This document shows positions 58,037 through 60,716 of a stretch of 64,000 nt of DNA, piece by piece. Every line of letters begins with the position of its first letter. Within the stretch, counting starts at the first letter, position 1. The translations under genes were made by a program, and so were the position numbers. The notes beneath the pieces were generated by a model. It did no database searches. It was not told where the DNA came from and saw only the letters and a program-made list of their open reading frames with translations. Source of the stretch: Octopus sinensis (lineage: Eukaryota); the NCBI RefSeq assembly GCF_006345805.1, contig NC_043010.1, forward strand, positions 53,692,001 to 53,756,000. The letters run 5' to 3'.

Positions 58037-58695
58037 TACCACACAGCCACTCCTATAGATCAATTTAAACATTAAAACGTTTACCATTACGTAGAATCAA
58101 CCCGATGCTGCATCTTTACGTAATTAATTATTATGTGGTCATTATTAAGACCACTCACACCGCTTACATATGGAAATTTTCTGGAAAAATATAAATACTA
58201 TCTATTGATTAAAAGCAAGCAATCAGAAGCAGGGTAATAAGATAAATGATAATTTATAGACATAATTAAATAAGCATTTTAATAAATCTCAAAAGTGTTT
58301 ACTGATATAAGTAGACGTAACTGTATAAAAATATTGCATATATATATATATATATATATACATATATAAAAAATTGTATATATATATATTATATATATAT
58401 ATACATATATATAAATACATACATAGATATATTTATATATATTATATATATAATATATATATATATATATGTATATATACGTATATGTATATATATGTTT
58501 ATATATACATGTATATATATATGTATATCTATATGTATATAAATATATATATATATGTATATATATATAACCCACGCTGGTGGAAAGGGGAGAACAGAGA
58601 TTCTTCGCTTGCTTATTTGAATTTGTTGATACTGTTAGTTACGAGCAGATCTTCGAAAGGGTATGTTCTTATTTTCAGTGTTTCCAAATCCAAAC

Positions 58696-58767
58696 AAGGA
58701 ATTTCTGAGCTGATGATAGAAGTGTTGTTGTTGACTAATCTTGAAACGTACGTTCTCAAATAACCTT
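58696..58767 (+). ncRNA. Type I hammerhead ribozyme-like motif, monomer 1
   Basis: AAGG..TGAG-CTGATGA(58710-16)-T AGA AGT loop ACT AA TCT T-GAAA(58743-46)-CGTACG TT-CTCA..CCTT; predicted cleavage after 58754. Confidence 0.65.
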
Positions 58768-59234
58768 AGCATTGATTTTTCGATGTCCTTACCCCCAAAC
58801 TTTTGTGAGTTGAATTAAGCAAACACTATATATGAGAGAGATTTTCTTTAAGTATTAGAAATAGCTTTAAAAAGTTTTTTAGCTGCTATTCTAATGAGTT
58901 CAGTATGCGGCAAAGTAATTTATTTTACTAAGCCCTTTTATAATGTAATAATTTGAATTCGCCTTGAATGGTCCCTTTGCATACTGAACACTTGGTGAAA
59001 TTGATTATAATTAATTAATTTTGCCCTCAATTGTTGAAATTATAATTAATCTCCCTCTGATTAATGCTTCGGATTTTACCGAAATAAGCATAGTGTTTGA
59101 TGTTTTTAACCCACGCTGGTGGAAAGGGGAGAACAGAGATTCTTCGCTTGCTTATTTGAATTTGTTGATACTGTTAGTTACGAGCAGATCTTCGAAAGGG
59201 TATGTTCTTATTTTCAGTGTTCCAAATCCAAACC

Positions 59235-59306
59235 AAGGAATTTCTGAGCTGATGATAGAAGTGTTGTTTTTGACTAATCTTGAAACGTACGTTCTCAAAT
59301 AACCTT
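59235..59306 (+). ncRNA. Type I hammerhead ribozyme-like motif, monomer 2
   Basis: CTGATGA at 59249-55, GAAA at 59282-85, predicted cleavage after 59293. Confidence 0.65.
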
Positions 59307-59777
59307 AGCATTTGATTTTTCGATGTCCTTACCCCCAAACTTTTGTGAGTTGAATTAAGCAACACTATATATGAGAGAGATTTTCTTTAAGTATTAGAAA
59401 TAGCTTTAAAAAAGTTTTTTAGCTGCTATTTCTAATGAGTTCAGTATGCGGCAAAGTAATTTATTTTACTAAGCCCTTTTATATAATGTAATAATTTGAA
59501 TTCGCCTTGAATGGTCCCTTTGCATACTGAACACTTGGTGAAATTGATTAATAATTAATTAATTTTGCCCTCAATGTTGAATTATAATTAATCTCCCTCT
59601 GATTAATGCTTCGGATTTTACCGAAATAAGCATAGTGTTTGATGTTTTTAACCCACGCTGGTGGAAAGGGGAGAACAGAGATTCTTCGCTTGCTTATTTG
59701 AATTTGTTGATACTGTTAGTTACGAGCAGATCTTCGAAAGGGTATGTTCTTATTTTCAGTGTTTCCAAATCCAAACC

Positions 59778-59849
59778 AAGGAATTTCTGAGCTGATGATA
59801 GAAGTGTTGTTTTTGACTAATCTTGAAACGTACGTTCTCAAATAACCTT
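59778..59849 (+). ncRNA. Type I hammerhead ribozyme-like motif, monomer 3
   Basis: CTGATGA at 59792-98, GAAA at 59825-28, predicted cleavage after 59836. Confidence 0.65.
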
Positions 59850-60323
59850 AGCATTTGATTTTTCGATGTCCTTACCCCCAAACTTTTGTGAGTTGAATTA
59901 AGCAAACACTATATATGAGAGAGATTTTCTTTAAGTATTAGAAATAGCTTTAAAAAAGTTTTTTAGCTGCTATTTCTAATGAGTTCAGTATGCGGCAAAG
60001 TAATTTATTTTACTAAGCCCTTTTATATAATGTAATAATTTGAATTCGCCTTGAATGGTCCCTTTGCATACTGAACACTTGGTGAAATTGATTAATAATT
60101 AATTAATTTTGCCCTCAATTGTTGAAATTATAATTAATCTCCCTCTGATTAATGCTTCGGATTTTACCGAAATAAGCATAGTGTTTGATGTTTTTAACCC
60201 ACGCTGGTGGAAAGGGGAGAACAGAGATTCTTCGCTTGCTTATTTGAATTTGTTGATACTGTTAGTTACGAGCAGATCTTCGAAAGGGTATGTTCTTATT
60301 TTCAGTGTTTCCAAATCCAAACC

Positions 60324-60395
60324 AAGGAATTTCTGAGCTGATGATAGAAGTGTTGTTTTTGACTAATCTTGAAACGTACGTTCTCAAATAACCTT
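60324..60395 (+). ncRNA. Type I hammerhead ribozyme-like motif, monomer 4
   Basis: CTGATGA at 60338-44, GAAA at 60371-74, predicted cleavage after 60382. Confidence 0.65.
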
Positions 60396-60716
60396 AGCAT
60401 TTGATTTTTCGATGTCCTTACCCCCAAAATTTTGTGAGTTGAATTAAGCAAACACTATATATGAGAGAGATTTTCTTTAAGTATTAGAAATAGCTTTAAA
60501 AAAGTTTTTTAGCTGCTATTTCTAATGAGTTCAGTATGCGGCAAAGTAATTTATTTTACTAAGCCCTTTTATATAATGTATATATATATATATGTGTGTA
60601 TATATATACATATACATGTATATATACGCTTATATATATGTATATATATATATGTTTACATATATATATATATGTATATATATGTTTATATATATATGTT
60701 TGTGTATATACGCTTA

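What the first reader, a model, noticed from the sequence alone, without database searches (positions are those of the whole stretch)
58569..60580. Tandem ~545-bp satellite with a type I hammerhead motif in every monomer: candidate cephalopod retrozyme
Seen: 3.7 near-identical head-to-tail monomers with no ORF. Each has CUGAUGA and GAAA cores; helix II (AGA+AGT paired to ACT+TCT with an AA bulge); helix III within the perfect palindrome AACGTACGTT; and bipartite helix I (TGAG/CTCA, internal loop, AAGG/CCTT). The substitution I noticed within the motif (TTGTTG vs TTTTTG) falls in loop II. Predicted cleavage sites at 58754, 59293, 59836 and 60382 would release monomers of 539, 543 and 546 nt. 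Known: metazoan non-LTR retrozymes (newt satellite 2, Schistosoma Sm-alpha, Mytilus, coral and axolotl examples) are tandem non-coding repeats with type I hammerheads, often with a short palindromic helix III that works as a dimer, and they give circular RNAs. Inference: this is a retrozyme-like or PLE-mobilised locus with a monomer at the large end of the range I know for animals. I am not aware of one characterised in octopus but cannot verify that. Caveats: U.U at position 10.1/11.1 and a GUU triplet are non-canonical.
Basis: partly seen in the sequence, partly recalled or inferred. Interest (0 to 1): 0.92.

Follow-up and report, generated by a model that had tools for sequence, protein, structure and literature searches.

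The report
Hammerhead-ribozyme tandem repeat, likely octopus retrozyme
A 2-kb block of 3.7 nearly identical 545-bp repeats, each carrying a weak but non-random hammerhead self-cleaving RNA motif, is most likely a new octopus example of the known "retrozyme" circular-RNA retroelements; self-cleavage is untested.

Summary
Window 58570-60580 is 3.7 head-to-tail monomers (periods 539/542/546, 98.5-99.7% identical), non-coding, inside a (TA)n microsatellite. Each monomer has a type I hammerhead-like motif at the stated coordinates.

The motif exceeds chance:
- A relaxed descriptor expects 0.005 hits per 64 kb in 1000 shuffles.
- None of 719 decoy-core descriptors hits the array.
- A covariance model built only from four experimentally validated retrozyme hammerheads ranks it first in the window (13.5 bits; E=0.14 for the window, 0.0012 for one monomer).

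The core fits the field's CUGANGA/GAAAY/RUH rule. U.U at 10.1/11.1 occurs in the axolotl HHR_Amex2 ribozyme. Helix III plus loop is a perfect palindrome (ACGUACGU), as in all four validated ribozymes.

Against: no Rfam hammerhead model matches, even at E<=10 on 111 nt. Helices I and II are weak, and the hammerhead fold is not the predicted minimum. No other copy could be retrieved, so conservation, covariation, copy number and expression are untested. In a 2026 preprint only 1 of 9 predicted retrozyme dimers cleaved.

Verdict: probable non-LTR retrozyme, a new member of a known kind, of moderate interest. Octopus origin has indirect support. A 545-bp monomer is within the reported 51-972 bp range.

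The parts
58570..60580 (+). Tandem array: 3 full monomers (58570-59108, 59109-59650, 59651-60196) plus a 384-nt partial fourth (60197-60580). Monomer about 545 bp, 32% GC, non-coding.
58696..58767 (+). Hammerhead-like motif, monomer 1 (core CUGAUGA at 58710-58716; predicted cleavage after U 58754; G instead of U in loop 2)
59235..59306 (+). Hammerhead-like motif, monomer 2 (core at 59249-59255; predicted cleavage after 59293)
59778..59849 (+). Hammerhead-like motif, monomer 3. Helix I is AAGG/CCUU plus UGAG/CUCA around a 6x5 internal loop. Core CUGAUGA 59792-98. Helix II is U.U, then AGA/UCU, an AA bulge, AGU/ACU and a 10-nt loop. GAA 59825-27. Palindromic helix III ACGUACGU 59828-35. U17 at 59836.
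60324..60395 (+). Hammerhead-like motif, monomer 4 (core at 60338-60344; predicted cleavage after 60382)
58338..58569 (.). Left flank: (TA)n microsatellite abutting the first base of the array (putative target tract)
60581..60697 (.). Right flank: (TA)n/(TG)n microsatellite abutting the last base of the array. The same tract also holds a mariner remnant (60712-61948).

Best explanation
The array is a non-autonomous, non-LTR retrozyme of the metazoan type, that is, a tandem repeat descended from a Penelope-like-element (PLE) type of hammerhead-bearing sequence.

Proposed mechanism (every step is inferred from sequence and from the published retrozyme model; none is shown here):
1. The + strand is transcribed as a multimer.
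2. Helix III is only 2 bp plus a palindromic GUAC tetraloop, so a single motif is weak. Two motifs pair through ACGUACGU into an 8-bp helix III, a domain-swapped double hammerhead. Each then cleaves after G-U-U17 (58754/59293/59836/60382).
3. This releases 539-546-nt linear RNAs with 5'-OH and 2',3'-cyclic phosphate ends.
4. The monomer refolds into a branched, 64%-paired structure in which the two ends lie stacked inside a helix. A host tRNA-ligase-type enzyme or the ribozyme itself joins them into a circular RNA.
5. A PLE reverse transcriptase acting in trans copies the circle or multimer, primed at a nicked (TA)n tract. This would explain a 3.7-unit, near-identical array with arbitrary ends set directly into a microsatellite.
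For: - The motif has the conserved catalytic centre CUGAUGA / GAAAC / GUU, which fits the field's CUGANGA/GAAAY/RUH rule, and type I topology.
- It is beyond chance: 0.005 expected per 64 kb and 0 of 719 decoy cores hit the array.
- It is the best hit in the window for a model built only from the coral, mussel and two axolotl ribozymes that were shown to cleave: 13.5 bits, E=0.14 for the window and 0.0012 for one monomer.
- Helix III plus loop is a perfect palindrome starting at A15.1 (ACGUACGU). The four validated ribozymes have ACAGUACUGU, ACGCGCGU, ACACGUGU and ACAUGU.
- U.U at the base of helix II occurs in HHR_Amex2, which cleaves better as a dimer.
- Array features fit published hallmarks: tandem repeat, GC below 45%, no LTR/PBS/PPT, no ORF, highly self-paired RNA. 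Here GC is 32%, z=-5.2, the circular fold is -135 kcal/mol with 64% paired, and the ligation site lies inside a helix.
- 75% of retrozyme families have at most 7 units, and lengths span 51-972 bp.
- The array sits in a (TA)n tract, which makes up only 6.9% of the window. PLEs show an insertion bias for microsatellites.
- A PLE-like reverse transcriptase fragment lies at 39856-40450. PLE families are reported in Octopus spp..
Against: - No Rfam hammerhead model matches, even at E<=10 on a 111-nt slice.
- The custom-model score is modest. The next unrelated hits score 12.2 and 10.7 bits.
- Helices are weak. Proximal helix I is 4 bp. Helix II is A/U-rich with a U.U, an AA bulge and a 10-nt loop.
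- The hammerhead fold is -2.1 kcal/mol against a minimum of -8.6 for the 72-nt motif. The double hammerhead is -16.0 against -25.6 for the dimer minimum, where AAUUUCU pairs with AGAAGU instead.
- The four validated ribozymes fold locally to -14 to -21.5 kcal/mol; this one reaches -9.4.
- U at 10.1 removes the purine N7 metal ligand of the A9/G10.1 site, and GUU is a slower triplet than GUC (established hammerhead enzymology, from my own knowledge).
- Only 1 of 9 predicted Xenopus retrozyme dimers cleaved in vitro.
- There is no second copy in the window. No similar ORF exists among about 15 billion predicted proteins, which do include octopus data. Exact look-ups and DNA pattern scans found nothing. 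Mobility, copy number and conservation are therefore unshown.
- Both strands fold well (z -5.2 and -4.7), so the pairing could reflect DNA-level inverted repeats.
Confidence: 0.55

Rival explanations
1. Dead relic. The monomer descends from a hammerhead-bearing element (retrozyme or PLE pseudo-LTR), but the ribozyme no longer cleaves usefully. This array grew, or is maintained, by DNA-level processes such as unequal exchange or replication slippage rather than through a circular RNA.
For: The motif is non-random. It is thermodynamically the weakest when compared with validated ribozymes, and Rfam does not recognise it. Most predicted retrozyme dimers tested in Xenopus were inactive. No sign of other copies or of abundant transcripts appeared in the collections I could reach.
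Against: The catalytic core is intact in all four units and the helix III palindrome is perfect. The monomers are nearly identical, which implies a very recent origin. The array has ragged ends set directly into a microsatellite with no microsatellite between units. That looks like a single insertion of a multimer rather than local duplication.
Confidence: 0.25
2. Ordinary satellite or minisatellite whose monomer contains a hammerhead look-alike by chance.
For: - No Rfam match.
- The custom-model E-value for the whole window is only 0.14, with a rough calibration.
- My descriptor thresholds were set after seeing the motif.
- Scaling one search's rate to a genome of a few gigabases gives hundreds of chance hits to such a relaxed descriptor.
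- The four copies are one observation.
Against: For the 545-bp monomer as the pre-specified search space, three separate nulls give about 1e-3 or less. The model was built without reference to this sequence. The motif also shares two unrequired details with validated retrozyme ribozymes, namely the palindromic helix III and CUGAUGAU...UGAAAC. The surrounding monomer has the expected retrozyme properties.
Confidence: 0.15
3. Assembly artefact: a single copy, or a different number of copies, mis-assembled into 3.7 units.
For: Differences between units are almost all 1-nt homopolymer length changes, the error signature of long reads. The true unit number and identity are therefore uncertain.
Against: Unit junctions are clean and in register, and both ends join unique flanks. 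Collapse, not expansion, is the usual assembly error for tandem repeats. Even a dimer would leave the interpretation unchanged.
Confidence: 0.05

Closest known systems
Metazoan non-LTR retrozymes (Cervera & de la Pena 2020, PMC7229834), especially the Mytilus galloprovincialis Mg353 repeat
   Same: - Mollusc host.
- AT-rich, non-coding tandem repeat with one type I hammerhead per unit.
- Core CUGAUGA...GAAAC.
- Helix III plus loop is an 8-nt perfect palindrome (mussel ACGCGCGU, here ACGUACGU).
- Helix I is interrupted by an internal loop.
- The archetypal loop1-loop2 nucleotides are absent in the mussel ribozyme as well.
- The monomer RNA is highly self-paired.
   Different: - Monomer of 545 bp against 350-390 bp.
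- The mussel helix II is a clean 4-bp stem closed by G10.1-C11.1 with a 5-nt loop. Here it has U.U, an AA bulge and a 10-nt loop.
- GUU against GUC at the cleavage site.
- The mussel element has about 5000 copies, proven self-cleavage and abundant circular RNA. None of these is known here.
Axolotl Rtz_353 / HHR_Amex2
   Same: It has the identical junction CUGAUGA-U...U-GAAAC, that is, a U.U mismatch at 10.1/11.1. Helix III is 2 bp capped by a palindromic tetraloop (ACACGUGU). Cleavage is poor as a monomer (22% in 1 h) and much better as a dimer.
   Different: The axolotl helix II is GC-rich (GCC/GGC) and helix I has 6 bp. The triplet is GUA, the unit is 350 bp, and there are about 60,000 copies in a vertebrate genome.
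Newt satellite 2 and Schistosoma Sm-alpha hammerhead satellites
   Same: These are tandem satellite-like repeats transcribed into self-cleaving type I hammerhead RNAs. The short helix III in newts requires the ribozyme to act as a dimer.
   Different: Those ribozymes match Rfam Hammerhead_1 and have conserved loop-loop contacts. This motif matches no Rfam model.
Pseudo-LTR hammerheads of Penelope-like elements
   Same: They are minimal type I hammerheads with a very short palindromic helix III, occurring in tandem and acting as dimers. PLEs show an insertion bias for microsatellites. A 2026 preprint derives animal retrozymes from PLE pseudo-LTRs.
   Different: No reverse transcriptase or GIY-YIG ORF is associated with the array. 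The PLE-like fragment in the window lies 18 kb away and shares no significant similarity with the monomer.

Membership tests
Metazoan non-LTR retrozyme | Head-to-tail tandem repeat of tens to hundreds of bp, with at least two consecutive units each carrying a complete hammerhead motif (operational criterion of Li et al. 2026) | tested here: met
   There are 3.7 units and 4 motifs. The 545-bp unit is within the reported 51-972 bp range.
Metazoan non-LTR retrozyme | Low GC, no LTR/PBS/PPT and no coding capacity | tested here: met
   GC is 32%. The longest ORF is 93 aa with no homologue. There are no terminal repeats other than the units themselves.
Metazoan non-LTR retrozyme | Monomer RNA is highly self-paired | tested here: met
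   Minimum free energy is -140 kcal/mol with z=-5.2. The circular fold has 64% of bases paired. The minus strand also gives z=-4.7, so this is not strand-specific proof.
Metazoan non-LTR retrozyme | Many dispersed genomic copies or arrays (mobility), with PLEs present in the same genome | not testable with these tools
   No cephalopod genome can be searched by DNA with these tools. There is no other copy in the 64-kb window, and pattern scans and ORF look-ups found nothing. A PLE-like reverse transcriptase fragment is present at 39856-40450, and PLEs are reported in Octopus spp..
Metazoan non-LTR retrozyme | Self-cleavage of transcripts, and linear plus circular monomer RNA in tissues | not testable with these tools
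   This needs in vitro transcription, northern blots or RNA-seq.
Type I hammerhead ribozyme | Conserved catalytic centre CUGANGA / GAAAY / RUH | tested here: met
   CUGAUGA, GAAAC and G-U-U17 are present in all four units.
Type I hammerhead ribozyme | Three helices around the core with helix I open, and regular helices including a 10.1-11.1 pair | tested here: inconclusive
   The topology is right. However, 10.1/11.1 is U.U (precedent: HHR_Amex2), helix II has an AA bulge, proximal helix I is 4 bp, and helix III is 2 bp plus a tetraloop. The hammerhead fold is not the predicted minimum.
Type I hammerhead ribozyme | Match to the curated covariance model (Rfam Hammerhead_1 or any hammerhead family) | tested here: not met
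   There is no hit at gathering score, and none at E<=10 on 2.1 kb or on 111 nt.
Type I hammerhead ribozyme | Match to a model built from experimentally validated retrozyme hammerheads | tested here: inconclusive
   It is the top hit of the window but scores only 13.5 bits, with E=0.14 for 128 kb and 0.0012 for one monomer. The model rests on 4 sequences and its calibration is rough.
Type I hammerhead ribozyme | Conservation of the core and covariation in the helices among independent copies | not testable with these tools
   Only four near-identical copies are available. They differ by 2 substitutions, one of them in loop 2.

The most novel reading that the evidence does not exclude
An active octopus retrozyme. 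Its unusually weak hammerhead (A/U-rich bulged helix II, U.U at 10.1/11.1, GUU site) would work only as a double hammerhead through the ACGUACGU palindrome, so cleavage would be coupled to multimeric transcripts. It would yield a roughly 545-nt circular RNA and would have been mobilised very recently into a (TA)n tract by a PLE reverse transcriptase. To my knowledge this would be the first characterised cephalopod retrozyme, and a hammerhead variant that curated models miss.
Probability: 0.3. Interest if true: 0.5.

Novelty: new member of a known kind. Interest (0 to 1): 0.38.

Why it matters
If it is confirmed, the known host range of retrozymes and their ribozyme-made circular RNAs would extend to cephalopods.

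It would also add a natural hammerhead that keeps the core but has a very degenerate helix II, which no Rfam model detects. That would suggest genome annotations undercount such ribozymes.

It would also offer a very young insertion for studying how these elements integrate, through the 3.7-unit array in a microsatellite. It would not change the current picture of retrozymes, which are already known from many invertebrate phyla including molluscs.

Tried and rejected
- **Rfam.** I searched the whole window at gathering score, the array at E<=10 and a 111-nt slice at E<=10. No ribozyme family matched. The only hits were false microRNA-like matches in the flanking (TA)n tracts.
- **Other copies via spurious ORFs.** Five exact look-ups of array ORFs found nothing. 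One word-indexed search with the 93-aa ORF also found nothing.
- **Other copies via DNA patterns.** Two metagenome scans, one prokaryotic-genome scan and one viral scan found nothing. None of these collections is expected to hold cephalopod DNA, so the negatives say little.
- **Link to the GAAACGTACGT site at 40627(-).** A Smith-Waterman alignment with the monomer was not significant (26 of 500 shuffles scored as well), and that site has no CUGANGA core. I rejected it as evidence of relatedness.
- **Taxon from the neighbouring mariner.** The best named hit was a mantis shrimp at 83%, with Octopus sinensis at only 64%. A related ENA contig shares only the mariner. Mariners transfer horizontally, so I rejected this as a taxon marker. 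The SINE-like repeat pointed to Octopus bimaculoides.
- **Strand asymmetry of G.U pairs.** There are 23 on the + strand and 11 on the - strand. Base composition confounds this, so I did not use it.
- **Pfam on the PLE-like fragment.** No hit. PDB search with its best homologue was uninformative.
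Full report
**1. What is there**

Window 58570-60580 is a head-to-tail array of 3 full monomers and 0.70 of a fourth. Monomers start at 58570, 59109, 59651 and 60197, with periods of 539/542/546 and pairwise identity of 98.5-99.7%. Tandem Repeats Finder missed it only because its longest period is 500.

- The units differ by two substitutions, 1-nt homopolymer length changes and one small AT-rich indel cluster. That is the error profile of long reads, so the true identity may be higher still.
- The monomer is 32% GC.
- Its longest ORF, 93 aa and present in one unit only, has no relative among 5.8 billion protein clusters.
- The array begins and ends abruptly inside a (TA)n microsatellite (58338-58569 and 60581-60697), and there is no microsatellite between units.
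- The same tract also holds a mariner remnant at 60712-61948 (Pfam Transposase_1).
- There is no other copy of the monomer in the 64-kb window.

**2. The motif**

In monomer 3:

| Element | Coordinates |
|---|---|
| Distal helix I, AAGG/CCUU | 59778-81 / 59846-49 |
| Proximal helix I, UGAG/CUCA (separated from the distal part by a 6x5 internal loop) | 59788-91 / 59837-40 |
| Core CUGAUGA | 59792-98 |
| Helix II: U.U, AGA/UCU, AA bulge, AGU/ACU, 10-nt loop | 59799-59824 |
| GAA | 59825-27 |
| ACGUACGU (helix III) | 59828-35 |
| U17 | 59836 |

Cleavage after 58754, 59293, 59836 and 60382 would release RNAs of 539, 543 and 546 nt. A 3-bp helix III with a 2-nt loop cannot form as a hairpin. The realistic monomeric form is 2 bp (A15.1-U16.1 and C15.2-G16.2) capped by the palindromic tetraloop GUAC.

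**3. Is it more than chance?**

Three separate nulls say yes.

- *Shuffles.* I used a deliberately relaxed type I descriptor: CUGANGA; helix II of at least 3 bp with a mismatch allowed at 10.1/11.1; GAAA; helix III of at least 3 bp; H17 not G; helix I of at least 4 bp. It finds 0.005 hits per 64 kb on both strands in 1000 dinucleotide shuffles.
- *Decoy cores.* On the real sequence, which keeps its natural hairpin content, 719 descriptors with permuted cores gave no hit in the array. Only 9 gave any hit in the window.
- *Independent model.* I built a covariance model from four retrozyme hammerheads that were shown to self-cleave: coral Amil224, mussel Mg353, and axolotl Ax353 and Ax330. Their sequences come from supplementary table 2 of PMC7229834. 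The array motif was not used in building the model. It is nevertheless the best hit of the whole window at 13.5 bits, with E=0.14 for 128 kb and E=0.0012 when one monomer is the search space.

Two cautions apply. The descriptor thresholds were chosen after seeing the motif. The model's calibration is rough and the next unrelated hits score 12.2 and 10.7 bits. The fair summary is p of about 1e-3 for this monomer, not certainty. The four copies count as one observation.

**4. Comparison with validated ribozymes**

The supplement of PMC7229834 states the field's criterion for the catalytic centre, CUGANGA / GAAAY / RUH. This motif meets it with CUGAUGA / GAAAC / GUU, so GUU lies inside the consensus.

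All four validated ribozymes have a helix III plus loop that is a perfect palindrome starting at A15.1: ACAGUACUGU, ACGCGCGU, ACACGUGU and ACAUGU. The array has ACGUACGU.

The U.U at 10.1/11.1 is described for axolotl HHR_Amex2, and Ax353 has the same junction, CUGAUGAU...UGAAAC. That ribozyme cleaves 22% in one hour as a monomer and much better as a dimer. The mussel ribozymes also lack the archetypal loop1-loop2 nucleotides.

**5. Evidence against a working ribozyme**

- No Rfam hammerhead family matches at gathering score, at E<=10 on the array, or at E<=10 on a 111-nt slice.
- The helices are weak. For the 72-nt motif the hammerhead fold is -2.1 kcal/mol against a minimum of -8.6.
- The domain-swapped double hammerhead is -16.0 against -25.6 kcal/mol. 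The minimum keeps the intermolecular palindrome and helix I but replaces helix II with AAUUUCU/AGAAGU pairing.
- The validated ribozymes fold locally to -14 to -21.5 kcal/mol, and three of the four keep helix II in the minimum. This one reaches -9.4 and does not.
- From established enzymology (my own knowledge), G10.1 contributes a metal ligand and GUU is a slower triplet than GUC.
- In a 2026 preprint only 1 of 9 predicted Xenopus retrozyme dimers cleaved in vitro.

**6. Context that fits a retrozyme**

- The cleavage-to-cleavage RNA folds to -140 kcal/mol with z=-5.2. As a circle it is 64% paired, and the ligation junction lies stacked inside a helix. The minus strand also gives z=-4.7, so DNA-level inverted repeats could explain the pairing.
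- Published hallmarks are tandem units, low GC, no LTR/PBS/PPT and highly self-paired circles. All are met.
- Family consensus lengths span 51-972 bp and 75% of families have at most 7 units. A 545-bp, 3.7-unit array is therefore ordinary.
- (TA)n tracts cover 6.9% of the window, and PLEs show an insertion bias for microsatellites.
- Near-identical units with ragged ends and no microsatellite between them look like a single insertion of a multimeric copy. This is inference.
- A PLE-like reverse transcriptase fragment lies at 39856-40450. It is 49% identical to a Porites reverse-transcriptase-domain protein, and reading the LPKIHK...GRPIVS-type motifs as PLE-like is my own judgement. PLE families are reported in Octopus spp..

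**7. Taxon**

The mariner is uninformative. Its best named hit is a mantis shrimp at 83%, with Octopus sinensis at 64%. The SINE-like repeat scattered through the window matches named proteins only from Octopus bimaculoides, in three separate clusters. An octopod origin is therefore likely but indirect.

**8. What could not be done**

No tool here searches cephalopod DNA. ORF look-ups and pattern scans found no second copy. Copy number, mobility, conservation, covariation and expression remain untested.

The absence of any similar ORF among about 15 billion predicted proteins, which do include octopus data, hints weakly at low copy number or low expression.

**9. Verdict**

| Explanation | Probability |
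|---|---|
| Non-LTR retrozyme array whose type I hammerhead acts as a dimer | 0.55 |
| Hammerhead-derived but catalytically dead relic, amplified at the DNA level | 0.25 |
| Chance look-alike in an ordinary satellite | 0.15 |
| Assembly artefact | 0.05 |

This is a new member of a known kind. Retrozymes are described in many invertebrate phyla including molluscs. In addition, 235 Rfam Hammerhead_1 hits were reported in the giant squid genome, and my literature searches found no cephalopod retrozyme described. Interest is moderate, at 0.38.

Noticed in passing
window 28711-28768 (+); repeat arms 28356-28446 and 28767-28857: There is a second hammerhead-like motif: GACGGGUG-CUGAUGA-A GGGG...CUCU A-GAAA-UAUGGCAUAU-A|CGUCCGUU. 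It has an 8-bp helix I, a 4-bp helix III, an AUA site and a poor helix II with A.A at 10.1/11.1. It sits just upstream of the second arm of a degenerate direct repeat of about 411 bp (80% identical). Only 9 of 719 decoy cores give any hit in the window. Neither my four-sequence model nor Rfam reports it. It may be an old retrozyme or PLE relic.
   Followed up: partly
window 40627-40650 (-), next to 39856-40450 (+): The 11-mer GAAACGTACGT of the array's helix III occurs once more (0.01 expected by chance). A 4-bp helix-II-like hairpin (GGCU-UAACU-AGUC) precedes it, and a (TG)n microsatellite follows straight after the would-be cleavage site. It lies beside a PLE-like reverse transcriptase fragment. 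There is no CUGANGA core, and alignment with the monomer is not significant, so this could be a decayed PLE hammerhead or a coincidence.
   Followed up: partly
window 60712-61948: A mariner remnant with both inverted terminal repeats (ACGAGGGGCGTTCAATAAGTAATGCC...) and a frameshifted transposase (Pfam Transposase_1). It is inserted in the same (TA)n tract as the array. An ENA contig carries a copy 89-94% identical, and the best named protein hit is from the mantis shrimp Oratosquilla oratoria at 83%. This suggests a horizontally spread family.
   Followed up: partly
window 19054-19326, 19972-20193, 29483-29944, 52424-52642 (-); 25185-25439, 30321-30563, 32864-33103 (+): There are many copies of a SINE-like interspersed repeat whose translation contains ...RNWYLIYRPRKDERQSRPRRNLNSE.... 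Its only named protein matches are three Octopus bimaculoides 'uncharacterized proteins'. This is the evidence used for the octopod origin of the window.
   Followed up: partly
window 58505-58578 and 60576-60649: With the E-value threshold, Rfam reports mir-297, mir-3149, mir-1277 and mir-466 'precursors' (up to 51 bits, all below gathering score) in the (TA)n/(TG)n microsatellites flanking the array. These are low-complexity false positives.
   Followed up: yes
window 58570-60580: Nearly all differences between monomers are 1-nt changes in homopolymer runs (for example TTT/TT at 59762 and AAAAAA/AAAAA at 59952). This looks like uncorrected long-read error rather than divergence, so the monomer lengths of 539/542/546 may not be real.
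   Followed up: no
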